Assembly (NCBI GenBank): GCA_951804945.1
Contig: OX638155.1
Location: 28,768,001 to 28,832,000, forward strand
Length of the DNA stretch: 64,000 bases
Source of the DNA: Podarcis cretensis
Lineage: Eukaryota
Direction of reading: 5' to 3'
In this document: positions 4,501 to 49,046 of the stretch, piece after piece
Position numbering within the stretch: the stretch's first letter is position 1
Layout: each line of letters starts with the position of its first letter
The notes under the pieces: generated by a model
What the model saw: the letters and a program-made list of their open reading frames with translations, nothing else
Told to the model about the DNA's origin: nothing
The model's database searches: none
Program-made: the position numbers and the translations under genes

Positions 4501-6303
4501 TAATTTGACACTTGCTTCCATGGACCCTTCCATTTTGGTTAGCTAAGAAGGCATGAAAGCCCATCTGTAAGTTGTGCCAAACCGAGTCGTCTGTGTGTAG
4601 ATATTCCAAGCATCGTTGCAACACTATTTAATATACAGGCAATTCCCAGTTTAGGAGCATCTGAATGGCACATGGCCGCACACACATGCACAGCGCTGAA
4701 CCTGTGGGAAATAGCCCCAAAATGTCACAAAAAGGGGCTGGTCTGGGTTTATGTGTGCTCTGTGGACGCTTGTGGAGGTCAGACCGCTGTGCAAAACAAG
4801 GATTGCCCTGTATATATGTATATGGTGTTAAACACCTGCTGGGCCAACTCTGAGATTATTTCATGAAAATTCCACAAACTGCAACTCTGTGAAACTGTCA
4901 GGCTTTAAAATAGGCATTGTGACCAAATGCATAAACTCAGGTTTGATCTCAAATGTGTGCTCTGCATTGGTCTCATCATGGGTGCATTTTAGATCTCATA
5001 CAAACATTCCAGCAATCACCAGGAAGAAGCCTTGGCTCTTCTGAAGCCAGTGGGAGACTTGCCATTCACTTCAGTGGTGCCAGAATCACACCTTAGGGAC
5101 TTGTTCTTGGGCCATGCAGTAGTAACAACCATATCCAGGAAAGCCCAAAGTATGAATCCATACACGATCTCATAAGCATGGTTTTTAAAAAATAAAAATA
5201 AAATAAATTCACTGTAGCTTCTTTGAATAATTTGGACCCAAATTTGCTTGGAACAGTTCTGTCCCCTTATTATCTCTGTATCATTCTCTCTGCCCCATCT
5301 GCTAATTTAAAATGAGAACTTCTGCACAAGTTGCAGCTAACATGTTTTTCTTAATTTTTTGCTTCTTTTGTGTTGATGATTCATTTGGAATATATTGCTT
5401 TCCTATTGGGAACAGCCTTTTAAGGCTCAAGAGTGGAGAGAAGGACAAAATTACTTAAAAGAAAAGAAAGAAAAAAAGAACACAAGCCAGCAACAGTTTC
5501 TAAGACACCGAGTTCCAGAAAATGTTCCATATAAGCCAAAAGTGAACAGCTGCCTTTTACTTAAACTGCAGACTTCTCATTCTTTTCTTTGAGACTAATG
5601 ATGTGAGCAAATATGTCATGTTCCTTAACATTTGATGAGATGGTTTTCAATAACTATGAATCTATAGAGTTCGTGAAGCTGAAGCAAAGAGAGATTGCTC
5701 TGTTGTCCGCTTGGAAGTAGGATGAGCACTTTTGAGTTGGGTTTGTTTAGTTTGAGGGCAAAGTCAATACAGGATTGACATGGTAAATCCCAGACTGTTT
5801 ATGTCAGGCCTCACAATAGTTTTAAAAATTAGAGGCTGTGAGCGTGAACTGAACCTAAAACCATACGATAGTTTTTTGAGACTTCAGTAGTAGAATCCTG
5901 GACTTTACTAATTCAGACTACAGACCTTCCCACATAAACAGTGACCTGCATGTAGCAAAGCAGTACATCAGAGAACATGTGTAGCATGGCCACTTCCCTA
6001 ATGCGTCCAGTTTCTTGCACACAAAGGAAAATTTAAGTTGGGGAACATTAAAAAAAAAAAAACCTCTTTTGCCAAACCCTTCTCTGCCATGTTGTAGAGA
6101 TGGCCAAGAGTCAGGCACCCTGAATTGTATTTACTTATTTATCACATTGGTACTTGATACTTAGTTTATTTTATGAGGTATCATAAAAAAGATTAAATTT
6201 TGCATATAGATTGGAGCTTGTCAGGCAAAACCTTGACTTGTAATGATTTTGCAGAGATAGGATTGCCTAATGGGGAAGTGGCAAATAGATAAGATCATCT
6301 AAT

Positions 6304-6460
6304 CCAGCGTTTCCCAAACTTTGGTCTCCAGCTGTTTTTGGACTTCAACTCCCATCATCCCTAGGCTAGGGATGATGGGAGTTGTAGTCCAAAAACAGCT
6401 AGGGACCCTAGCTAGTGGTCAGGGATGATGGGAATTGTAGTCCAAAAACAGATGGAGTTG
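6304..6460. mobile_element. Palindromic hAT-like MITE fragment
   Basis: ctcccatcatccct / agggatgatgggag inverted arms with a partial internal duplication; same family as 38482 and 61340. Confidence 0.65.
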
Positions 6461-7340
6461 GGCACAATGTTGATCTAACCCATTACCTTAACGAGCTGCT
6501 GTGCTGTTTGAATCACTTGAATATAACTTTTGAATGTATTGTCATTTAAATGCATGTCCAAAGTACTTCTTAAACTAGCGAGGTGTCTTAGGGGAACATT
6601 ATTGTATTGCTACCATTTAAGGCAACACAAAAGTAGAAATGGTGCTTGTGGAATTGTTACGGTATTATAAAATTCATTCAGCCTAGTGTAATTTAGGCAC
6701 ATCTTTTCTTTTTTAAAAAAGGAGGGTTTTAAAAGTCTTAATGAATAGTCAGAATGAAGCTTCCTTTTCTATCTTTTAGAGCTCTTAAAAATAATAATAA
6801 TACAGGGGGGAAGTTGTGGTAGTGGTTTTAAATCACATCATCATTGCAGACCACATTTTATCATTACGAAAACCGCTGGCATTGTTAACAAAACATAATG
6901 GAAAGATTAATGATATTCTTGTAAGGTAGGTCAGGTTTCTGGCCAACCTTAGCATCCCTTGGAGAAAATTACACAGCTTTTCTTCAATTGTTTGTGAAGG
7001 CAATAACCCTAGTAAAAGAAAATGACGGTAACATTTGACCTTATTTCAAGAGGAACCATCTAAGTTGAAACCACAACATTCTCTTACCTCTTTCCCCATG
7101 AGTTATTTCTTCCCTGATTTAATGACAGTTCTTAAATCATTAGGGCACAGGAATTTGTTGAAATAATATAGTTTTTTAAAAAATTCTTTCTTGCTTGAAG
7201 ACTGTTGAAAATGCACCAGTGTAAGCGCAGATAATGGCTTATCAAACACCTGCCAAGCTCATATTGGAGGTTTTTCCATGATACAGCATGTTGTGAGTAG
7301 TTTGGAGGATATGTAAGACTGTATCAAATTACAATTATCA

Positions 7341-7655: not shown

Positions 7656-7833
7656 AAAACAATCTAGTAAAGAAGGCTAACTTTCAGCTTCTTGTGACTA
7701 AACCATGTCAGCACCACATCAAAAATCTGTTTGAATTTGGCAATAATTAAAGGTAAAATTGCTAGGAAAGGAAACACACCTGTGACAGCCCAGTGAAGTG
7801 AGTGGGAAATTGTGCAAAAGTATACATTCAGAC

Positions 7834-8947
7834 GGGACGCGGGTGGCGCTGTGGGTTAAACCACAGAGCCTAGGACTTGCCGATCAGAAGGTCGGCGGTT
7901 CAAATCCCCGAGACGGGGTGAGCTCCCGTGGCTCGGTCCCAGCTCCTGCCAAAGACTCTCCTCCCTGAAAGAGAGGGGAGTGGTTGTGGGCGGGAGCCTG
8001 AACACCGCCCCTAGCAGGGGGCGTAGCCCCCTGCCTCCAGCTCACCTGGCTGGTGCTCACGCCCCCCTGGTGGCTGTCCAACCAGGTGCCATGGGGGGGC
8101 GTGTCCAGCAGCCTTGATGCTGCAGCGTCAGCCTCTCCCTGGCCTCATTTCTCTTCATCGTCCTGTGCGAGTCACCCACCCTCCACTCCCACTGAGTTAG
8201 GGCTTAGGTCATTGGCCTTGCTATGGACCTTAGGTTGGTCGCCCCGGTTGCACGGGGGGCCTGGTAGGAGTTTTTCCATTTGGCATTAGGCTTTTTGGTT
8301 TTTTCGCCTACCTCGTAGCAATCGTCACAACTTTTGTGGTATTGGTGGGTAGGTTAGGCATTGGAATAATGTGCTGTGGTGTGTCGAAGTGCTAGGTGTG
8401 GCCATCGCCTATGCCTTCAATGTTTAGGGGTATTCCGTTAAAGGAATCTGGCGGTCGTGTATTCTGTCCAATACCTGCTTGGCGGGAGACCATGGCACGA
8501 CCCTCGGTGACAGCAGGAGTGAGCCTATAGTTGGATTAGCATCAACAGGTGATGAACCCCTGGTGAATAAACCCACTTGTTTCGTGATCCAATGCCTAAG
8601 CCAATACCTTTTCATTGCTGTAATCAATAAAGTTGTGGCCTTTTCTAGCCCATTAACCTTATATCACGTGTCCCTGTGTCTTCTTTTCACGTCGCGGTGG
8701 TCGGGTCCTCGAACCACAACCTAGCAGTTTGAAAACACGTCAAAGTGCAAGTAGATGAATAGGTAGGCAGGAAGGTAAAAAGCGTTTCCGTGCGCTGCTC
8801 TGGTTCGCCATAAGTGGCTTAGTCATGCTGGCCACATGACCTGGAAGCTGTACGCTGGCTCCCTCGGCCAATAAAGCGAGATGAGGGCCGCAACCCCAGG
8901 GTCGGTCACGACTGGACCTAATGGTCAGGGGTCCCTTTACCCTTTAC
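7834..8947 (+). mobile_element. Sauria-type SINE split by a 767-bp insertion
   Basis: Both halves align to the intact copy at 17902; 12-bp TSD tatacattcaga (7821-7832, 8948-8959). Confidence 0.9.
7953..8719 (+). mobile_element. Unclassified element nested in the SINE (DIRS/Ngaro-like terminal repeat or solo-LTR-like)
   Basis: Precise interruption of SINE sequence gcCAA|cctag; no long TSD; 5' hairpin; AATAAA at 8566 and 8626. Family assignment is inference. Confidence 0.6.
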
Positions 8948-10307: not shown

Positions 10308-10417
10308 GGGATGCGGGTGGCACTGTGGGTTAAACTACAGAGCCTAGGACTTGCTGATCAGAAGGTCGGCGGTTCGAATCCCCACGACGGGGTGAGCTCC
10401 TGTTGCTTGGTCCCTGC
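10308..10417 (+). mobile_element. Sauria-type SINE, 5' fragment
   Basis: Matches the first ~110 nt of the 17902 copy. Confidence 0.85.
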
Positions 10418-11903
10418 AGTATTAAATTTTAACAGTATTAAATTCCCCCCATCCCAACAGGAAATTGAGCCAAACCAGTGCCTGAGTTTCTAATCCAAAA
10501 TAGGGTTGCAGTACGTCCGGGATTTCCCAGATATATCCAGAATACCGCAGTCAGCAGCAGTGTCCGCGCTGAAATCAGTAAAACGTCCAGAAAAATCCGG
10601 GCGCAAGTCAAAGATTTCACCCAACTCAGGAAGGATATACTAATATATACGGCTTGCATTTAAATGCAGAGTAGTAGCCTGTGCCCACAAACACTCTCAT
10701 AACTTAAGTTTAAAAAAATATCCTTCCTGTGGTGACCACTGTGCTCAGTCTAGACTGCTATGTCAACGTGTTGTTGAAGAATAGTAAACAAACGAAAAAA
10801 GAAGAAGTTCGGCATGAAGAACCTTTTAGTGAGTTTGGGATAATTAATGGCTCAGTAAATGGCTGCTGATGTGTAATAGTCCTGTTAAGAACCTGAGTAA
10901 TGCTGACCTTTGAAGACAGGCCAAAAACTGTGGTCCTCAGAACCATAATTAAAATAAGAGGACCCTGTCTGAAATTCAATGGCTTGAAGAAAGTGTTCTG
11001 TTTGTTCTCACTGCATTTTCAGGGATATTTATGCCTGGTTGAAAAAATACATAACTGAAGGGCTGGATAGAGAGTGTAGGAAAGTAGGCAATGTTGAGAA
11101 AAAAACACGTATATATGAAATATAGCTTTTTATAGCTCTGATGTTTTGCTGTGGCAGTGCTCCATGGTGTGATGTGTGCTCAAGGAAGAGAGGGAAAATT
11201 ATTTTAATCTGGCTGCCTCAGTAATATAGAAGCAAAACCAGTAGCTACTTCACCAATTACGTAAATTTCTATAATATAATCGGTGCTGAGATAAATGATT
11301 AGAATGAATTAAAATCTTCCAGCTTCTTGCCCAAAGAAAGAAGTTTTAGTTTTATAGTAAAAGAAATGTTTAGATTTCATGGGAAATGTCATTTTCAGTT
11401 GCAAAAGTGCTTGTCCTGCAAATGCTCTAAATAGGTGTCAGGACGTATCTGTTTAAGAATAGTAGCTCAAAGGCGATATTTATAAAATAGCAAATGGACA
11501 TTCTTCCTCGAAAAGCTGAAGCTAATTTTTCCATTCTCAAGAGCCTTGTGGGATAGAAATTCCAGAAATAAATGATTTCTGTGTCAGCAACAGAGTCCAT
11601 ATTGCTTAGGTAGTCCTGGTCACTGCTTTCTTTTTTTCTAGCTCATGTGTTTGATGGCCTTATTTATTCTTGAAGGGGTTTACTGAAGAGTAAAAACAGT
11701 GTGTGTATTGTATGTACACACACAAATACATACATACATAAACATATGTATGTAGGCAATGCCCAAGAAGCTGTTCTTCCATATTCTCTTTGATTGAGTA
11801 GTATAGCGGCATTAAAATGCCCAGGCTAGAACTGAAGAGATCTGGTTCACATCCTGAGTCAACCATGGAGCTCAGCAGATGACATTGGGCTCGTCACACA
11901 CTC

Positions 11904-14996: not shown

Positions 14997-15145
14997 AGAT
15001 TCAGATCTGTTTTTGCTGGACACCAGAGCAGTATGGGCCTCCGAAGAAGGCTGGCTGGAGTTTGACATCACTGCCACCAGCAACATGTGGGTGATAAACC
15101 CTCAGCATAACTTGGGACTCCAGATGAGCGTGGTGACCAGGGACG
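14997..15145 (+). CDS. BMP6: BMP6 exon 3 ([49 protein letters not shown])
   Basis: Long polypyrimidine tract then cttcag|14997; donor 15145|gtaagt; 149 nt; phases join exons 2 and 4. Confidence 0.96.
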
Positions 15146-15820
15146 GTAAGTAACAGGCCAACATACTTTAAACATCTGGCCAATGTCCTAGTCATTAATT
15201 GGAAGTGCTGTTTATAGTGTTCAGCTGTGATGTGATGATCTGGCTAATGTAGCCAAGCACACAGCTGTGATGTGATGGCCGGGGTCTGGATCCAACTGCA
15301 CATATTGGAAAGCTGCTCTCTCTAGGCTGCATGCCCCATGTCTGTGGCTGTGAAATTTTGGGAATGCCTGACTTCTGGATGTGAGGGTTGGGGGGGTGGG
15401 GCATGGTGCTTACAGCAAGGTTTTTCTTAAATATAAATAATACCCATAGGTCTCTGTGTGGGGCTGTGGAAGTGTCTTCTGGGAGGGTGATGTGAGCTCC
15501 TCAATTTTTGTGTATCTTTCAACCGGACCAAGAGGCCTTCTGTTTACTTATCTGCTGATGAAATGCCACAGTGCATAACATTGCCTCAGTGTTTCAACCT
15601 CTTTTCCTGATGCAGCTACGGAGAGGAACTTATGCTAAGTTTTGGGGAGTTCTCCTCTCATGCTTCCCTTTTGCAACATGCCACAGATAATTTGGGGCCT
15701 TTGGAGCCCCAGAATTTGACATAATATATTTCACTTTCTGGTGGAATTCAATAGAGCATATGAAGCTGCAAGGGTACCAACTTGAATCAAATATTGGAAG
15801 TGGGGGGCGGGTAAGCCCTG

Positions 15821-17316: not shown

Positions 17317-17901
17317 GTAACCTCTTTTCATTGCCTCCTGGATTATGTGAAAATGAAAAGGGGAAAAAATACTATTTTGTAGCTTTCGTTTCCCAAGCAC
17401 TTTACATTCAGAAGCTGCTTTGAATTCATCTCTCATCGTTCAAGTGTTTCATTTCTTCTTCTTTTTTCTTTCTTTCTCATGGTCACAAAAGTTTAGATGA
17501 CCCTCCAAGGGAGGATCTGTTCCCTGGGTAGCAGGAACTCATTGTTCTGCAAGTTTTTGTAGAGTGGGACATCACTCAAAATCATGATGGCTCTATCAAG
17601 GCAAAGTTGATAGAGGAGCCCTACCATTAGGCAGGGTGAGGTAGCTGACCAATCTTATCCTGCAGCCTTGTGATAAAAAACTGAAACGTGTGAAAAACTG
17701 AAAAATTGTTTGCTCAATTGCTTTGGTTGTTGTTATTATTTTAGTATCTGCTCTGATCTACAAAAAACAAACCAAGCATTGCTGAATATGTCTTTCAGTC
17801 AGCTCATTTTCTTTCGTCCTTAAAGTCCAGAACTTACTGTGCTTCTAAACAAACGCCTTAAAAACACACATTTAATTACCTGCCTAGTAATGATTGTTTA
17901 A

Positions 17902-18250
17902 GGGACGCGGGTGGCGCTGTGGGTTAAACCACAGAGCCTAGGACTTGCCGATCAGAAGGTCGGCGGTTCGCATCCCCGTGACGGGGTGAGCGCCCATTGC
18001 TCGGTCCCTGCTCCTGCCAACCTAGCAGTTCAAAAGCACGTCAAAGTGCAAGTAGATAAATAGGTACCGCTCCGGCGGGAAGGTAAACGGTGTTTCCGTG
18101 CGCTGCTCTGGTTCACCAGAAGCGGCTTAGTCATGCTGGCCACATGACCTGGAAGCTGTATGCCGGCTCCCTCGGCCAATAAAGCGAGATGAGCGCAGCA
18201 ACCCCAGAGTTGGCCATGACTGGACCTAATGGTCAGGGGCCCCTTTACCT
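17902..18250 (+). mobile_element. Full-length Sauria-type SINE
   Basis: tRNA-related head with GGTTCG B-box-like motif, TTTACCT tail; 14-bp TSD taatgattgtttaa (17888-17901, 18251-18264). Confidence 0.92.
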
Positions 18251-18820
18251 TAATGATTGTTTAATGCTATTCCACTTGACAAGTAAGTAATAAGCCATGT
18301 ATACAAGTCCAGGCCCAAAGCGGCAAACTAAGCATTTGTCCAGGGTGCAAACCTGCTTCACTTATGCAATTGTCTTGGGAAGAGAGAATGAGCTGCTGTC
18401 TGAACTGTTCAGAGGAGATGCCCAGGGACGGCTTAGGAGTGCCTTGGTTTAAATCTATCCCACTGTCAGAGGAGCTTCCTTTAGCTGAGGTCACAGCAGT
18501 TGAGCTCCAACTCATTTGTAACGGGGAGGAAATAAAGAAGTGGCAGGCAGTAAAAACATCCTACTCAGTTATTTATTGTGCTATTGTTAACACTACTCAG
18601 TGGATCATTGAGAGCAGGCACAGAATTTTAATTTGTCTAAGGCAACAACAACGAAAAAGCCCTGTGCCACTCCTACACACACAACAGTGAATTGTTATGC
18701 TTTTAAGACAGTTAAGTTTCCTTTGCTGCAATGGCTTATTTAAGTACTGGCCTTGATTCAGCTGCATATGCTACATAAACAGCTGTTTGGTATACCTTTG
18801 CAACCGGTTATCTGACAGCA

Positions 18821-19117
18821 GGTACGTAGCCGTGTTAGTCTGCTGTAGTCAAAACAAAATAAAAAAATTCCTTCCAGTAGCACTTAGAGACCGACTACTG
18901 TACGTTTGTTATTGGTATGAAGTGGCATGAAGTAAAGTTACAGTTCTGTCATAAAACCCTGGACTGATATACACGTTGACTGAACATCTTTTACACCCAT
19001 GCTTTGAGAAAGAAGAAGTGGTATCTGAAGAATTGTGCATGCACACGAAAGCTCATACCAGTAACAAACTTAGTTGGTCTCTAAGATGCTACTGGAAGGA
19101 ATTTTTTTATTTTGTTT
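18821..19117 (+). mobile_element. Penelope-like element (pLTR with inverted partial pLTR)
   Basis: 16-bp TSD cggttatctgacagca (18805-18820, 19118-19133); ~70-bp inverted arms (about 18851-18920 vs 19053-19117); hammerhead core. Confidence 0.8.
19019..19060 (+). ncRNA. Minimal type I hammerhead ribozyme motif (Penelope-type)
   Basis: Stem I UGGUAU/AUACCA, core CUGAAGA (19025-19031), stem II UGUG-CAUG-CACA, GAAA (19047-19050), palindromic AGCU helix III, CUC cleavage triplet. Confidence 0.7.
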
Positions 19118-21225
19118 CGGTTATCTGACAGCACAGGTCAGTTTGCTTATTCAGTAACTATAGCAATAGACTCGTGCTCTCAGTATGGAAGCCTACACCT
19201 TTCTCAAAGCATTGGTGTAAAAGATGTTCAGTCAAGGTGTATATCAGTCCAGGGTTTTGTGACAGAACTGTAACTTGACTGACATCTTGTGTTGATGATG
19301 TCTGAGGCAGCACAGATTCCTTTTGAGTTAATTGCAAACTGCTGGTGAACTGATAATGCCATGGTACGATCACACATTTCAGGATATTAAGGCCTTGTGC
19401 CCATTCCAAAACCTTCAGCGGCCCTCTGTGGTTTTCATCAGAGGAATTTGAAAGTGACGCAAGTTTTTCTCCACCATTGGCCAGAGAACTTGGGAAAGAA
19501 GGAACAGCAGGAACAGGCGTCTAAAGTTGCATGCATCTTGCTTCTTTGTGTATACTGTCAAAGTACAGCATATGAAAGTATACTGAAGCAAGGCATTTCA
19601 TTATCTCTCCTAAGCCGACTCCTTTTATGTTAAGTGGGTTAATCAGTTTACAACAGCTGTATCCCTCAAAACAATCGCCTGCTAAAGCAAACCCTGAGAA
19701 AAGGAGAGTCGTAGAGATCTCTTTCAAAACAATGTTGATGTATCCTGGATATTAATTACATTGTAGAATCTGGTGAATGGGCTCATTAGGAGCAGTTCAT
19801 GTGTTTTGGAAGGATTAGCGCCAATAAATATAGCTTACCTACTTTCAGTGGAGAGAAGCTTTTAAAAATTTTAAGTCCAGCCCACGAAAATGCCAAATTT
19901 CACATTAGAACAAACCTTTCTTGTGGTTAAGTTTCGAGGGATGTTCGCTCCAAGGTGCTCCCCACATCTTGGGCTGGGGTGGGGGGAAGACTGGCACGTA
20001 TTTATATTTGTGTAAACTTTAAATATTTAGTTTTTATGCAAATTTAAACTTTTCCATTAACTGATATTGAAACTAAAGTTAAAAACTAGTTCAGAACCAA
20101 CCACATAAAAAATTATTAGGTACCAATACAGTACTCAATCCTGTCTTTTGCACAAATGAATTCCAGTGCTGAGTACAGGGGTCTGCAGTGCTTTGTTAAC
20201 AGTGCAAAATGTAAAAATGCTGATTTCTAGACTGATTGTTACCAACCCAATTTTTGCTTATTTCCAGCCTTTATTTTGCTTTCTGCTACAAATTGCTGCT
20301 TTTATATATATATAAGTTGTTTTCCTTGTTGCTGTTTTAATGTGGACGAGTGTTGGGTGTGGATGGTGGAAGTTGTTATCCAAAACATCTGGAAGGCTCC
20401 AGGTTGGCCAAAACTGTAAAATGTGGCCTGAAACTGCACCACACGATTCTCCTGATTGTTTTCCAGCTGCTAGCTTGGACTGGAAGTACAAGAAGCAGGC
20501 ATTTAACAATGCTTTCCACTTTTGGTCAAGCACAAGTGGCCTTGATTTGAAAGCCAATGGCTTGTCTAAAAACCTCTAGTGATGGGGAGTACATTCTTAT
20601 ACTAGCTAACCATCTTTTGCCAAGTTGATTAAATTTGTGATTCAAGTAGAGTCAATCTGAAGATCTGAAATTGAAATTCTTAAGATTTATTTATTTATTT
20701 TTTTAAAAAAGGAACACTCCCCAAGCTCTTACACTGTTCTCTTTTTAAAACAACTCCCAATCTCTTGTGGTTTCTAGGTTAGGTTTATTTTGAGGCAGAG
20801 GGACGCCAAAACACTGTGCCCCAGCTGGATTCTATGATCGCTTGATGTGCTTTTAGCACTGTACTTTTCCCTTTAAGTAAATACTGGATTTTTTTTTTTA
20901 AAGAAGTTTCCTTCGAGACCCTGAGGAATTGCAAACAACTTCAATAGGAAGATGGTATCTAGAAAGCTGCCTGTGTCCTCCTCTCTGCGGTCTGGTGGCA
21001 CTGAGTCAGTTAACAAAGGGCCTCTATATCTGCAGCCTTGCAGATTACAGGTGTCAAGAGGCTGCAACAAAATTTTGTAAGCATCCGACTAGTAATAATG
21101 AGGATGCTGGCACTATCACGACTTAGGCTGTGACAACTGAAGCACTGCACCCTATATGATGTAAACCTCTGTGGCCAGGTTGGTGCTGGCAAAAACCTTG
21201 TGGGTGTTCTTTTAATTTCAAATAG

Positions 21226-21480
<255 letters not shown>

Positions 21481-22489: not shown

Positions 22490-22846
<357 letters not shown>

Positions 22847-23990: not shown

Positions 23991-24188
<198 letters not shown>

Positions 24189-25460
24189 CAAAAAGTTCTC
24201 TTCAGAAAGATCTGGTGTGCCATCCTAAATAACTTCCATCCAGTGCCTCAAAGGGAAAAACCTGAAGTCTAAGACTGTATTTGTGCCTTAAGGAGGATTT
24301 TCTTGGTTGTTGTTTGTTTTTAAGCAGAAGCAGGGGACTCCAATGCTACTTGCCCTTTTAAAGTATTTGCACAACGGTAGCCTTTGGTTCTTCTAATTTC
24401 TAAGTACACCAAAGAGGATTATAAAGTATGGACCATGGCTGAAGCAGCAAAGGTACAGACAAAAACCTGCGCGCTGTTTCAATCTTCAGTTCTGTTTCTC
24501 TAAGCAGGCACCTGCCAAATCCTGGTGGCGATGCCCACAAGGAAAAAACAGAGGCTGTAGCTAAGAAATGAAATGCACTATTCAAGGCAAAAATCTCCAT
24601 TCTTAAATGTAGCCAAGCTCTCCTTGCTTAACTTTAAAGGCCTGCAAACTGTAGGTGAGAACGTTGATTGGCAAGGTAAGTGCCTTGTATGAACTGCTGC
24701 ACTTAGGTTTCTGCAACACACACTGTGTTAAAGCAAGTTTTGTTCCTTGCCCTTCAACAGGGACATAACTGGCAATGTGCCCCTATAGCTATCACAAAAG
24801 GAAGTGTTCTAGAGGTTAAATTGTCCCATCAGGCTAACAGGAAGAAGCTTGTACATTTGCTCTAAAGGGAATTTCTATGCTTACATTCCGCAGCTCTCCC
24901 TCTTGCTAGTTTTGATCCCTCCCCTCCTTTTGAAAGCCTGACTAAAGAAGAAAAAGAGGTGTGGGAAGGGGGGGGGTAGAGGTGGTAGGACAGACCATGC
25001 AGGAGAACTGGCAGGTGGCAAGTTACTCAGTCTCACTGACCCAATTAAAAAGCACTCTTCAGATTGTGATCTGGTTGGTCAGGAATAAACTTGCACCTCT
25101 CACTTCTGCAAACATGAATTTAAAATGTATATACAATACTTATTTCTAATGTAAGAGAAATGTTTCCCCAAGGCAAGGAAAAGTGCACTTCCCTTTGACT
25201 ACTTTGCTCTTGTAAATAAATGAAAATGATAATTTATTGCAACTGTCAGATATAGTAATTTTGATGTACTATTAGCAAGACCAAGATTTTTTTTTTTGTA
25301 AAAAAAAGATTTATTCAGAAACTGTGTGTGTAAACAATTGTACCACTTGATTTTTACAGGAGTCATGACTTGCAGTTCAGCCTGCTCATGAGATTGTGCT
25401 TCATTAGGTTTTTAAAAGTCACCATGTTGAATAAAGGCTCCCTTTAAGGCAGAAACATGT
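24189..25460 (+). other. BMP6: BMP6 3' UTR (end approximate)
   Basis: Follows the stop codon; AATAAA at 25215-25220 and 25430-25435, the latter followed by a GU-rich tract near 25457. Confidence 0.55.
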
Positions 25461-46658: not shown

Positions 46659-47012
46659 GGTAAAGGTAAAGGGACCCCTGACCATTAGTTCCAGTCATGG
46701 CCGACTCTGGGGTTGCGGCGCTCATCTCGCTTTATTGGCCGAGGGAGCCAGCGTACAGCTTCCGAGTCATGTGGCCAGCATGACTAAGCCGCTTCTGGCG
46801 AACCAGAGCAGCGCACGGAAACACCGTTTACCTTCCCGCTGGAGCGGTATCTGTTTATCTACTTGCACTTTGACGTGCTTTTGAACTGCTAGGTTGGCAG
46901 GAGCAGGGACCAAGCTACAGGAGCTCACCCCATCGCGGGAATTCAAACCACCAACCTTCCAATCAGCAATCCCTAGGCTCTGTGGTTTAACCCACAGCGC
47001 CACCTGCGTCTC
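46659..47012 (-). mobile_element. Sauria-type SINE about 100 nt from the TXNDC5 exon 2 donor
   Basis: Homologous to the other copies. Confidence 0.88.
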
Positions 47013-47113
47013 TCACTATAAGCACTCAAAAGCAATTGCCCCCCCTCATGCTGGCATGGGCCTAAGGGAGATACACAGAACAATTAACGGATGCAATGCT
47101 CCTTTAAACGTAC

Positions 47114-47263
47114 GTCGGGTACCCTCTGACACTATACTCAGAACATAGTGGCGTATCCGCAGTGCAGTCCACTTTGACGACATAGACCTGTGGATCTTCC
47201 ATACTGTTGTACTTGTCTGCAAGATCATTCCATGTTGGCTGCAGGCGCTGGCAGTGCCCACAC
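47114..47263 (-). CDS. TXNDC5: TXNDC5 exon 2 ([49 protein letters not shown](T))
   Basis: AG acceptor 47265-47264, donor gtacgt; 150 nt; first CGHC. Confidence 0.96.
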
Positions 47264-49046
47264 CTGGAGTAAAAAAGAAGATGATTAATGAATTCATTTT
47301 CCTTTGTTACAGGGATTACTGAGATCATCTGCATATGGTTTAGAATCTCCATTTTCAACCACACTTATCGTCTAACAGAAGCCCGGGGGCTGGGCTTTGG
47401 TCCGATTTCAGGTTTCAGCTGATGTTTCTCAAACCGTGTTCTGGGGAAACACTCAGGTTCCTTGGAAGCTTATTGGTAATTTCAATAATGGCTGGAAAGA
47501 TTCTCTAAAAGATTTCTCATCTCCTCTTACTGATGGGGTGCCACCAAGGGAGTGTATTGGATGCAATCTTAGTTTACGTGAGTTAACAGTGATGTGAAAT
47601 GAGTATATAGCCTAGAACATCCCAGAAACCTCAGCGTCTTGCCGGACTTCCATGAGAGAGAGACAGCAGTTTTCCTGCACAAAACTTGATATGATGGAAA
47701 GGACTCCCAAAATATACAAAGTCTGAAATCACTGTATCTAGCAACTAATGTGCCTCAGAAACTTATTATTACTACTGTTATTAATAATTACTTTTGACAA
47801 ACACTCAGCAGAGTTTTAAGCATTTGTTCTGACATTAGTTAGTTAGTTGTTCAAAGAGATAAAGAGTGAGTCTAAAGCAGCTCTTTGGATCCCAAACATA
47901 ATAATGCTGCTTTGAAGAAGAAGATTGCATTACAACAGCAAACAGTGTGGATGCAGAAAACCGAATCATCAAGTTGATGGGAAGTTCAATCAAGACCATC
48001 ACTGGACAAGAAGCATCAGGTATATTCTGTAAAACCTCCCAATGTAGTGTGGGAAAGGCACTTTTCTTTAACCTCACAATATGTGTCACCCTGATGCTAA
48101 TCCAGGATATCTATAAGTGGTTAGGAGCTCAAGCAGACCAATTCCATCTCCCTCCATTTTCTTCTATTTTTTAAACTGATACTGTCAACATTGCACAAGT
48201 CAAAATTGAGCTGCTTTAGGGCTTCCAAACATTTCTTTTTATTTTACAAAGTACTATCCATTTTCAAAGACTTCCCCCAAGTGTGCAGAAATCATCCCTA
48301 TATTTATAGGTGGCCTTTTTTACTTCCACACTGATTGGTGCAAGACCACACAAGTCTGGCATTACTGTATTGTGCATTAGAGAGATGTGTGGTCCACTCA
48401 TTCATTTCCCAGGGTTCCTTTGTCCTCTTCAGAGCAATTTTGCAAAGGCCAAAACTCACATTACGATTTACCCTCTAGCAAGCTAGCTTGAATGAATTGA
48501 TTAATTATGGTCACAGACCAGAAATAGCAAGCTAGATGTGTACCCAGAAGCATCCTGGAAAAAGAGGGAAGACCATGAACTCAATGACTGGGGTGACTAT
48601 TTGCAAATGTTACAATCAGTATGGGATCATTTGCATACATAGGGAAATTCCACCCCCACCCCACCAAGTGTCCCTCTGGCTACCACAAGGCATATGTGGA
48701 GAAAGACAAAGGATAATGAATCTTTTCATGCCTCAAATATAACACATAATGCAAGTGTGCAACACCTGTGGCCTTCCAGGTGTTGCTGAACTCAAACTCC
48801 TAGCATCCTTGACCACTGGCTATGATAGCTGGGACTGAATAGGACTTGGGAGTCCAACAACTCCCTGGTTTTCCATGTTAAAAGGGACATTTCCCTATGA
48901 TGAAGGTGGGGAAACCCAGATTGCACATCTCATGACAGAAGAAATGCTCACATTCTGCCTTTATAACAATGAGCTGTATATGTGAAGACACCCACAGAAG
49001 ACACCTATTTGTATTGCAGAAAGAGGAATTGAAAACCTCTGGATTA

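What the first reader, a model, noticed from the sequence alone, without database searches (positions are those of the whole stretch)
19019..19060. Hammerhead-ribozyme motif on the sense strand of BMP6 intron 4
Seen: UGGUAU-CUGAAGA-AU-UGUG(CAUG)CACA-C-GAAA-GC-UC-AUACCA. This gives a 6-bp stem I, an intact CUGANGA...GAAA core and a CUC triplet (predicted cut after 19054). Helix III is reduced to the palindrome AGCU, which cannot close within one molecule. Known: Penelope-like retroelements carry such minimal hammerheads, proposed to cleave as dimers. Inference: every BMP6 pre-mRNA carries this motif, so it could cleave in trans with another BMP6 transcript or a related Penelope RNA and influence splicing or decay. 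Caveat: the base expected to be G10.1 is U (19033), so the pair closing stem II is broken and this copy may be dead.
Basis: partly seen in the sequence, partly recalled or inferred. Interest (0 to 1): 0.8.

Follow-up and report, generated by a model that had tools for sequence, protein, structure and literature searches.

The report
Dead Penelope-type hammerhead in BMP6 intron
The hammerhead-ribozyme-like motif is really there, but it is one mutated copy of a very abundant lizard retrotransposon fragment of the Penelope type that landed long ago in a BMP6 intron. Nothing found here suggests it does anything for BMP6.

Summary
The 42-nt motif at 19019-19060 is as described: a 6-bp stem I, a CUGAAGA...GAAA core, AGCU in place of helix III, a CUC cleavage triplet, and U where G10.1 is expected. 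It lies on the sense strand of BMP6 intron 4 (17317-21370).

It is not a chance motif (0 of 300 shuffles), and no Rfam hammerhead model matches it.

It belongs to a 297-bp insertion (18821-19117) flanked by a perfect 16-bp target duplication. The insertion consists of two inverted, 5'-truncated copies of one repeat, and one copy carries a 31-nt extra "tail". That is the published signature of a Penelope-like element insertion. The two 3' ends fall at +87 and +118 from A9, as in Anolis Poseidon (about 85-119).

The repeat fills thousands of contigs in four related species labels. All four share the left junction of this insertion, so it is old. Five other family copies, read through predicted proteins, have G where this copy has U19033.

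There is no tandem partner. Predicted folding gives stem I about 2% probability. AGCU pairing alone is millimolar-weak. No RNA data were available.

Verdict: an ordinary, decayed passenger; a role in BMP6 regulation is unsupported. The scan has already noted 83 hammerhead/Penelope motifs in this genome.

The parts
19019..19060 (+). Minimal type I hammerhead motif: stem I 19019-19024/19055-19060; core CUGAAGA 19025-19031; extra A 19032; U at 10.1 19033; helix II 19034-19037/19042-19045 with loop CAUG; C11.1 19046; GAAA 19047-19050; AGCU 19050-19053; C17 19054 (predicted cut after it)
   Evidence: Read directly. Only hit of the descriptor in the window, 0/300 shuffles. No Rfam hammerhead match even at E<=10.
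19033..19033 (+). U where the family has G (position 10.1); private lesion of this copy
   Evidence: The codon starting at 19033 reads L (TTG) here, V (GTN) in four other copies and E (GAR) in one (P0001-P0004, P0006).
19019..19117 (+). Plus arm: 5'-truncated copy of the repeat, short form, ending at +87 counted from A9 (19031 = +1)
   Evidence: Thousands of contigs of four species labels lie on it. Family letters differ at 19061 (A) and 19086 (G). Positions computed.
18821..18920 (-). Minus arm: inverted, more truncated copy of the same repeat, long form; lacks the ribozyme core
   Evidence: 87% identity to 19053-19117. 31-nt perfect and 15-nt inverted repeats I2 and I4.
18821..18851 (-). 31-nt A+C-rich 'tail' present on one arm only (long 3' end, +118)
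   Evidence: The same tail is translated in P0003 and P0004 (...ADEHGY / ...ADQHGY). Matches the 30-40-bp one-sided tail of Penelope-like elements (PMC8557442, PMC11167929).
18805..18820 (.). Left target-site duplication CGGTTATCTGACAGCA
   Evidence: Perfect 16-nt direct repeat D1.
19118..19133 (.). Right target-site duplication CGGTTATCTGACAGCA
   Evidence: Perfect 16-nt direct repeat D1.
18931..19012 (.). Filler between the arms: inverted copy of host flank 19199-19280 (78 of 82 letters complementary)
   Evidence: Inverted repeat I1; 4 mismatches; dominates the predicted fold, z -13.
18919..18936 (.). Short filler resembling 18537-18554 (16/18); overlaps a 10-nt tandem duplication at 18913-18933
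19199..19280 (.). Host sequence that served as donor of the inverted filler
17317..21370 (+). BMP6 intron 4 (GT...AG, 4054 nt), host of the insertion
   Evidence: Exon 4 ends about 17316 and exon 5 starts at 21371. BMP6 identity from exon 7.

Best explanation
The motif is the hammerhead of a short, high-copy lizard retroposon family with Penelope-like ends. One retrotransposition event put two inverted, 5'-truncated copies plus patchwork filler into BMP6 intron 4, duplicating 16 bp of target. Both cut DNA strands probably primed reverse transcription at the element's two internal start sites, which would give the short (+87) and long (+118) 3' ends; this step is inferred. In source elements the ribozyme is thought to process tandem or multimeric element RNA as a dimer, possibly helped by the element's protein (from the literature, not shown here). 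At this locus it is a solo passenger. It has lost G10.1, has no partner in cis, and is buried in competing pairings. It is most likely catalytically dead and neutral for BMP6.
For: The insertion anatomy matches the published Penelope-like element (PLE) signature (PMC8557442; PMC4209133 for opposite-strand pairs). It has a perfect 16-bp target duplication, two inverted truncated copies, and a 31-nt tail on one side only. The 3' ends at +87 and +118 from A9 match the Anolis Poseidon tail at about 85-119 and its RT starts at 111-118 (PMC11167929). The motif has the min-HHR hallmarks: an extra nucleotide after A9 and a palindromic 15.2-16.2 (PMC4209133). High copy number: 4951-6646 contigs laid per whole-genome-type run, with summed depth around a million against 8-23 on the flanks. 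Age: contigs of four species labels contain the left junction with 0-3.5% flank divergence, and two contain the right junction. The filler differs from its donor by 5%. Lesion: G in 5/5 other copies against U here. No cis partner. Folding: stem I probability 0.01-0.02 in context and under 0.09 in the element alone; AGCU duplex -2.5 kcal/mol. One relative is from Podarcis muralis.
Against: No reverse transcriptase or GIY-YIG ORF was linked to this family. The window has none next to it, and a search of 1.84 billion proteins joined the peptide to no such domain. Assignment to Penelope-type mobilisation therefore rests on insertion anatomy. The sequence is unlike the one Anolis PLE consensus I could read. 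A slipped helix II register (G19035-C19046) would keep a G-C pair next to G12, so inactivity is predicted, not shown. The target is not notably AT-rich. No RNA evidence of any kind was obtained.
Confidence: 0.87

Rival explanations
1. One reading: the intronic motif pairs through AGCU with a second BMP6 pre-mRNA or with a related Penelope RNA. This forms a dimeric hammerhead that cuts the BMP6 pre-mRNA after 19054 and so affects splicing or decay.
For: The core letters, stem I and the palindromic AGCU are present on the sense strand. The family is very abundant in DNA, so partner RNAs could exist. Dimeric cleavage of such motifs is documented in vitro (PMC4209133; review PMC6765202).
Against: The 10.1-11.1 pair is lost. 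The 4-bp helix III is worth about -2.5 kcal/mol, a millimolar-range affinity. Stem I probability is about 2% in context because of the 82-bp and roughly 65-bp inverted repeats. Intact PLE hammerheads cleave poorly even as tandem dimers (PMC4209133). The Anolis one needs its protein and leaves no RNA-seq ends (PMC11167929). The insertion has been tolerated through the divergence of four species labels.
Confidence: 0.03
2. The insertion matters to BMP6 not as a ribozyme but as a long fold-back. The 82-bp and roughly 65-bp inverted repeats form intronic dsRNA that could attract RNA editing, small-RNA processing, or alter splicing kinetics.
For: Predicted fold of 18790-19300 is -210.7 kcal/mol, z -13.3 against shuffles. 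The inverted repeats are 95-100% complementary.
Against: This is pure prediction. Such fold-back insertions are reported as common for PLEs (PMC8557442) and were noted many times in this genome. There is no expression or editing data, and the 5% decay of the arms looks neutral.
Confidence: 0.06
3. A host-domesticated intronic hammerhead like those conserved in amniote RECK, CTCL or DTNB introns.
For: Intronic, sense-strand type I topology. Such domestication from retroelement hammerheads has been proposed (PMC6155905).
Against: No match to any Rfam hammerhead model, including HH9 and HH10, even at E<=10. No helix III. It lies inside a target-duplication-bounded copy of a repeat with thousands of copies. 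It carries a core-adjacent lesion relative to its family.
Confidence: 0.01
4. A chance arrangement of CUGANGA and GAAA with complementary flanks.
For: CUGANGA alone occurs 21 times per strand in the window.
Against: 0 of 300 shuffles give the full descriptor. The same motif is inherited by many family copies, as shown by the translated copies VSEEVCMHTKAH.
Confidence: 0.005

Closest known systems
Minimal hammerheads (min-HHR) of Penelope-like elements (Cervera & de la Pena 2014, PMC4209133)
   Same: Type I topology with no helix III and a palindromic 15.x-16.x tetranucleotide. One extra nucleotide between A9 and 10.1. Mostly dispersed as single motifs in truncated copies, sometimes as pairs 100-700 bp apart on opposite strands. 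Reported in reptiles.
   Different: This copy has U, not G, at 10.1. Helix II is 4 bp (5 bp in the family) rather than the 6-8 bp typical of the published families. Helix II plus its loop is a perfect 12-nt palindrome.
Poseidon_Ac (PAc) of Anolis carolinensis: hammerhead, internal RT start sites and 'tail' (Frangieh et al. 2024, PMC11167929)
   Same: Same geometry. A9 is at +1, the cut lies a few tens of nt downstream (+24 here, +29 in PAc), and two alternative 3' ends lie about 31-34 nt apart at about +85-87 and +118-119. The tail is A+C-rich. Both DNA strands are used, giving inverted copies.
   Different: There is no recognisable sequence similarity to the PAc junction as read by eye from File S1. 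No ORF continues from this family, whereas in PAc the hammerhead overlaps the start of a 2.5-kb RT/EN ORF.
Animal non-LTR retrozymes / non-autonomous Penelope derivatives (PMC7229834; bioRxiv 10.64898/2026.07.22.740005)
   Same: Short, protein-less, hammerhead-bearing repeats thought to be mobilised by PLE machinery. Solo 'monomers' are scattered through genomes, including introns.
   Different: Retrozymes are defined by tandem units of 170-400 nt with full type I hammerheads that yield circular RNAs. Here there is a solo fragment of about 100-130 nt with no tandem array and no helix III.
Conserved intronic hammerheads of amniotes (RECK, CTCL, DTNB; Rfam HH9/HH10; reviewed in PMC6155905)
   Same: Sense-strand, intronic, type I.
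   Different: Those have a real helix III and loop-loop contacts, are single-copy, and are conserved across classes. This one matches no Rfam model and is a decayed repeat copy.
Newt satellite 2 and Schistosoma Sm-alpha hammerheads (Forster et al. 1988 and Ferbeyre et al. 1998, as cited in PMC4209133 and PMC6765202)
   Same: An unstable helix III means cleavage needs a double-hammerhead formed by two copies.
   Different: Those sit in tandem arrays, so the partner is on the same transcript. Here no partner exists in the sequenced part of the BMP6 transcript.

Membership tests
Hammerhead ribozyme, Penelope-type minimal variant (min-HHR) | Conserved core C3 U4 G5 A6 N7 G8 A9 ... G12 A13 A14 A15.1 ... 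U16.1 H17 | tested here: met
   ctgaaga 19025-19031, gaaa 19047-19050, t 19053, c 19054; descriptor hit.
Hammerhead ribozyme, Penelope-type minimal variant (min-HHR) | One unpaired nucleotide between A9 and 10.1 | tested here: met
   A19032. Feature listed in PMC4209133.
Hammerhead ribozyme, Penelope-type minimal variant (min-HHR) | G10.1-C11.1 pair closing helix II | tested here: not met
   U19033 opposite C19046. Other family copies have G. A slipped register, G19035-C19046, would need 3 unpaired nt and leaves only 3 bp.
Hammerhead ribozyme, Penelope-type minimal variant (min-HHR) | No helix III; palindromic 15.2-16.2 so that two copies can build it | tested here: met
   A-G-C-U 19050-19053; the duplex forms in cofold at -2.5 kcal/mol.
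Hammerhead ribozyme, Penelope-type minimal variant (min-HHR) | Helix I of 4-6 bp flanking the core | tested here: met
   UGGUAU/AUACCA, six Watson-Crick pairs, though predicted to be outcompeted in context.
Hammerhead ribozyme, Penelope-type minimal variant (min-HHR) | Site-specific self-cleavage 3' of H17 | not testable with these tools
   All runs found were assembled contigs, which cannot show RNA ends.
Rfam hammerhead families (Hammerhead_1, _3, _II, HH9, HH10) | Covariance-model match | tested here: not met
   No hit at gathering score over 64 kb and none at E<=10 on 18800-19200. This is expected, since those models include helix III.
Penelope-like element insertion | Target-site duplication bounding the whole unit | tested here: met
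   Perfect 16-nt repeat at 18805-18820 and 19118-19133.
Penelope-like element insertion | Inverted 5'-truncated copy adjacent to the 5' end of another copy | tested here: met
   Minus arm 18821-18920 against plus arm 19019-19117. Feature described in PMC8557442.
Penelope-like element insertion | 30-40-bp 'tail' at one end only, reflecting two internal RT start sites | tested here: met
   31 nt, 18821-18851, on the minus arm only. The ends are at +87 and +118, against PAc about 85-119.
Penelope-like element insertion | Family linked to an ORF with telomerase-like RT and GIY-YIG endonuclease | tested here: inconclusive
   No such ORF adjoins it. Seven protein hits carry the translated repeat, none with RT or EN domains.
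Penelope-like element insertion | AT-rich target preference | tested here: inconclusive
   This target has 8 of 16 A/T. Flanks of other copies in the contigs look AT-rich (loose-end consensus), but agreement is low.
Non-LTR retrozyme | Tandem units, each with a complete type I hammerhead | tested here: not met
   No tandem array, and a single motif in the window.

The most novel reading that the evidence does not exclude
Abundant RNAs of this repeat family that keep an intact motif pair with solo intronic copies such as this one, through AGCU and perhaps the 12-nt palindromic helix II. They then cut host pre-mRNAs in trans. Hundreds of lizard genes, BMP6 among them, would carry a transposon-dependent cleavage site.
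Probability: 0.03. Interest if true: 0.75.

Novelty: new member of a known kind. Interest (0 to 1): 0.12.

Why it matters
As it stands the finding is ordinary. It shows that hammerhead-like motifs in lizard introns are baggage of Penelope-type retroposons and should not be read as gene-specific regulators. This matters because the scan keeps flagging them (83 notes in this genome). The open question it touches is whether Penelope hammerheads ever cleave in vivo. That is better addressed genome-wide, by comparing copy 5' ends and RNA ends with the predicted cut site, than at this decayed BMP6 copy.

Tried and rejected
- **Rfam:** searches at gathering and at E<=10 gave no hammerhead, only two noise snoRNA hits.
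- **SINE check:** no tRNA-like gene in 18500-19500, so this copy is not a tRNA-headed SINE.
- **More copies in the window:** pattern searches and blastn found only the two arms, so no covariance model or covariation test could be built.
- **Family letter at 19033 from contigs:** the table shows only the best-supported rows and hides 20, so it was uninformative there. The answer came indirectly, from predicted proteins that translate other copies.
- **RNA evidence:** no listed run is on record as RNA. The one 'RNA?' run has flat depth of about 7 over the intron and may be DNA. All runs are contigs, so read ends at 19054/19055 could not be examined.
- **Literature:** a full-text search for four sequence strings of the element found nothing. 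The Lunse et al. dimer paper (PMC5785218) is not held. The supplement of PMC4209133 is not held.
- **Poseidon_Ac consensus:** it was compared by eye only, because text from a supplement has no reference for the alignment tools. That alignment step was left out.
- **BMP6 exons:** they were checked one at a time by reference (exon 7).
- **ORF starting in loop II:** the idea that the family is the start of a Penelope ORF (ATG 19039) was rejected as unsupported. It is only 29 codons open here, and no RT-bearing protein shares it.

Full report
**1. Observation**

The + strand at 19019-19060 reads tggtat-ctgaaga-a-t-tgtg-catg-caca-c-gaaa-gc-tc-atacca. This gives:
- a 6-bp Watson-Crick stem I;
- all conserved core letters (CUGANGA, GAAA, U16.1, C17);
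- the palindrome AGCU where helix III should be;
- a predicted cut after 19054.

Penelope-type minimal hammerheads carry one extra nucleotide after A9 (PMC4209133). With that, position 10.1 is U19033 opposite C19046.

I wrote a descriptor requiring stem I of at least 5 bp, the core, helix II of at least 4 bp, a 0-4-nt palindrome, and U-H. It finds this site and nothing else on either strand of the window, and nothing in 300 dinucleotide-preserving shuffles. If the 10.1-11.1 pair is required, there is no hit at all.

Rfam has no hammerhead match, either at gathering scores over 64 kb or at E<=10 over 18800-19200. That is expected, because those models contain helix III.

**2. Gene context**

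Stop-free stretches on the + strand spell the BMP6 propeptide and mature domain:
- exon 2, to about 2344;
- exon 3, about 14998-15147;
- exon 4, to about 17316;
- exon 5, 21371-21447;
- exon 6, 22580-22690;
- exon 7, 24039-24188.

All have GT/AG borders. Exon 7, searched alone by reference, hits BMP6 chains best (E 1e-29). I did not build a joined coding sequence. A thioredoxin-domain ORF typical of TXNDC5 lies on the minus strand near 47100-47360.

Intron 4 is 17317-21370. The motif lies 1702 nt from its 5' splice site, on the sense strand.

**3. What surrounds the motif**

A perfect 16-nt direct repeat, CGGTTATCTGACAGCA, lies at 18805-18820 and 19118-19133. It bounds a 297-bp insertion. Inside the insertion:
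- 19019-19117 is a plus-strand copy of a repeat.
- 18821-18920 is an inverted copy of the same repeat. It is 87% identical over the shared 65-70 nt and includes a 31-nt perfect inverted repeat.
- The inverted copy is more truncated at its 5' side and lacks the ribozyme core. It runs 31 nt further at its 3' side (18821-18851, 62% A+C over 18821-18852).

Between the arms is filler:
- 18931-19012 is an inverted copy of host sequence 19199-19280, with 78 of 82 letters complementary.
- 18919-18936 resembles 18537-18554 at 16 of 18 positions. This is the only such match in the window, and 0 of 300 shuffled 18-mers match within 2.4 kb.

**4. Match to the Penelope-like element signature**

This anatomy is the published signature of Penelope-like element (PLE) insertions:
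- strong 5' truncation;
- an inverted truncated copy abutting the 5' end;
- a 30-40-bp "tail" at one end only (PMC8557442);
- minimal hammerheads found as single motifs, or as pairs 100-700 bp apart on opposite strands (PMC4209133).

For the Anolis element Poseidon_Ac (PAc), the protein cuts and extends both DNA strands. Reverse transcription starts at two internal sites, and the tail spans about nt 85-119 from the AUG, whose A is A9 of the hammerhead (PMC11167929). Counting A9 (19031) as +1, the two arms here end at +87 and +118, and the cut site is at +24 against +29 in PAc.

The sequence itself is unlike the PAc junction, which I could only compare by eye in the paper's File S1. So this is another family with the same architecture.

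**5. Copy number and age**

Logan contigs of four runs were laid at 80% likeness or better. Between 4951 and 6646 contigs per whole-genome-type run lie on the repeat. Summed word depth is 0.5-1.3 million on 19002-19109, against 8-23 on the unique flanks. The tool warns that this is not a copy number, but it shows a very abundant family in species labels A, B and F, and also in G.

Nearly all family contigs read A at 19061 and G at 19086, so those two letters are private changes of this copy.

Junctions in the contigs:
- Left junction (unique flank, target duplication, start of the minus arm): A with 0 differences, B with 8 of 557, F with 19 of 550, G with 17 of 501.
- Right junction: A and G.

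The insertion therefore predates the split of these labels. That fits the 5% divergence between the filler and its donor.

**6. The letter at 10.1**

The contig table hides 20 rows and shows none for 19033, so I used another route. The plus arm translated in the frame of ATG 19039 was searched against 1.84 billion representative proteins. Five hits are short predicted proteins that simply read through other copies of the repeat:
- four come from small ENA contigs;
- one is a Podarcis muralis Ig-like protein with the repeat at its C-terminus.

In the alignment, the codon whose first base is 19033 is V in four copies and E in one. Both start with G. Here it is L (TTG).

None of the hits carries RT or endonuclease domains. 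Two of them (P0003, P0004) continue into the tail sequence, which shows the long form is a regular family variant.

**7. Can it work here?**

- **Partner.** A dimeric hammerhead needs a second copy. There is no other motif in the same orientation in the sequenced part of the transcript, no other copy of the repeat and no tandem array.
- **Strength of contact.** The intermolecular AGCU duplex is worth -2.5 kcal/mol (-3.9 with neighbours). That is a dissociation constant in the millimolar range (my arithmetic), far above plausible pre-mRNA concentrations.
- **Competing structure.** In the 18790-19300 context the predicted fold (-210.7 kcal/mol, z -13) is ruled by the 82-bp inverted repeat.
  - Stem I pairs have probabilities of 0.01-0.02 and helix II about 0.2.
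  - 19017-19026 pairs instead with 19084-19093.
  - A slipped helix II consumes G12 and A13.
  - Even in the 99-nt element alone, stem I stays below 0.09.
  These are thermodynamic predictions, not measurements.
- **Published data point the same way.**
  - Intact PLE hammerheads cleave weakly even as dimers or trimers, and mostly at unphysiological Mg2+ (PMC4209133).
  - The Anolis one cleaves only with its protein, is dispensable for insertion in vitro, and leaves no RNA-seq ends at the cut site (PMC11167929).
  - Animal retrozyme copies are under-represented in introns but still common there (bioRxiv 10.64898/2026.07.22.740005).

**8. Verdict**

The Penelope assignment and the caveat about 10.1 are right. 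The proposed role in BMP6 pre-mRNA cleavage has no support and several points against it, but it is not formally excluded, because no RNA data could be examined.

- All runs found were contigs, and none is on record as RNA.
- Earlier notes of this scan list 83 hammerhead/Penelope findings in this genome, many in introns of other genes. Follow-up agents on three other loci reached the same "ordinary Penelope-type insertion" verdict. I treat these as leads that agree with my result, not as evidence.

Noticed in passing
window 18913-19021 and 18535-18554: The joints between the two arms look like microhomology-mediated template switches. 18919-18936 matches 18537-18554 at 16/18. 19013-19021 (AAGAAGTGG) matches 18535-18543 at 9/9. 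18913-18933 is a 10-nt tandem duplication (TGGTATGAAG/TGGCATGAAG). The pieces overlap by 2-6 nt. Together with the 82-nt inverted flank copy, the filler is a patchwork taken from both sides of the target.
   Followed up: partly
window 18918-18920 (minus arm inner end): In element terms, the inverted arm stops at the predicted hammerhead cut site: the complement of 18918 is A1.1, with 2 nt of ambiguity shared with the filler. This could be a fossil of a self-cleaved template RNA or a coincidence (about 3 in 100 positions). A genome-wide tally of copy 5' ends would decide.
   Followed up: partly
window 18790-19300: Intron 4 of BMP6 carries a predicted long fold-back (82-bp arms 18931-19012/19199-19280, plus the arms of about 65 bp of the repeat; -210.7 kcal/mol, z -13.3). 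It is a potential dsRNA in every pre-mRNA. It was flagged separately by the scan as s1-836689.
   Followed up: partly
proteins P0003 and P0004 (from small ENA contigs): In two other copies the hammerhead is directly preceded by a shared stretch translating as EPGSPDYEST(A/T)LNHYTTL. By my reading this looks like an antisense tRNA-like (SINE head) sequence, which would suggest a recurrent composite of a tRNA-derived SINE and this repeat placed head to head.
   Followed up: no
protein P0006 = UniRef100_A0A670HY04, Podarcis muralis: An annotated Ig V-set protein ends in the translated repeat (...QAHTNKKLSWSLRCYWKEFF...). This is probably an exonised or mis-annotated copy of the same retroposon in a wall lizard.
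   Followed up: no
window 19019-19031 vs 19075-19086: The element has an internal similarity: TGGTATCTGAAGA against TGGTCTCTAAGA. Separately, in the predicted fold 19017-19026 pairs with 19084-19093, which competes with stem I.
   Followed up: partly
window 8743-8943(-), 18033-18260(-), 46660-46881(+); also 7786-7965(+), 10308-10490(+), 46770-47012(-): At least three copies of another interspersed repeat. Its open frames read ...KGPLTIRSS..LWGC.AHLALLAEGA... on one strand and ...ALWVKPQSLGLADQKVGGSNP... on the other. The second looks like a tRNA-derived SINE head.
   Followed up: no
window 24188-25460 and about 47100-47360(-): BMP6 ends at 24188 on the + strand, and a TXNDC5-like thioredoxin ORF lies on the minus strand. 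This is the convergent arrangement noted by the scan as s1-836717.
   Followed up: partly
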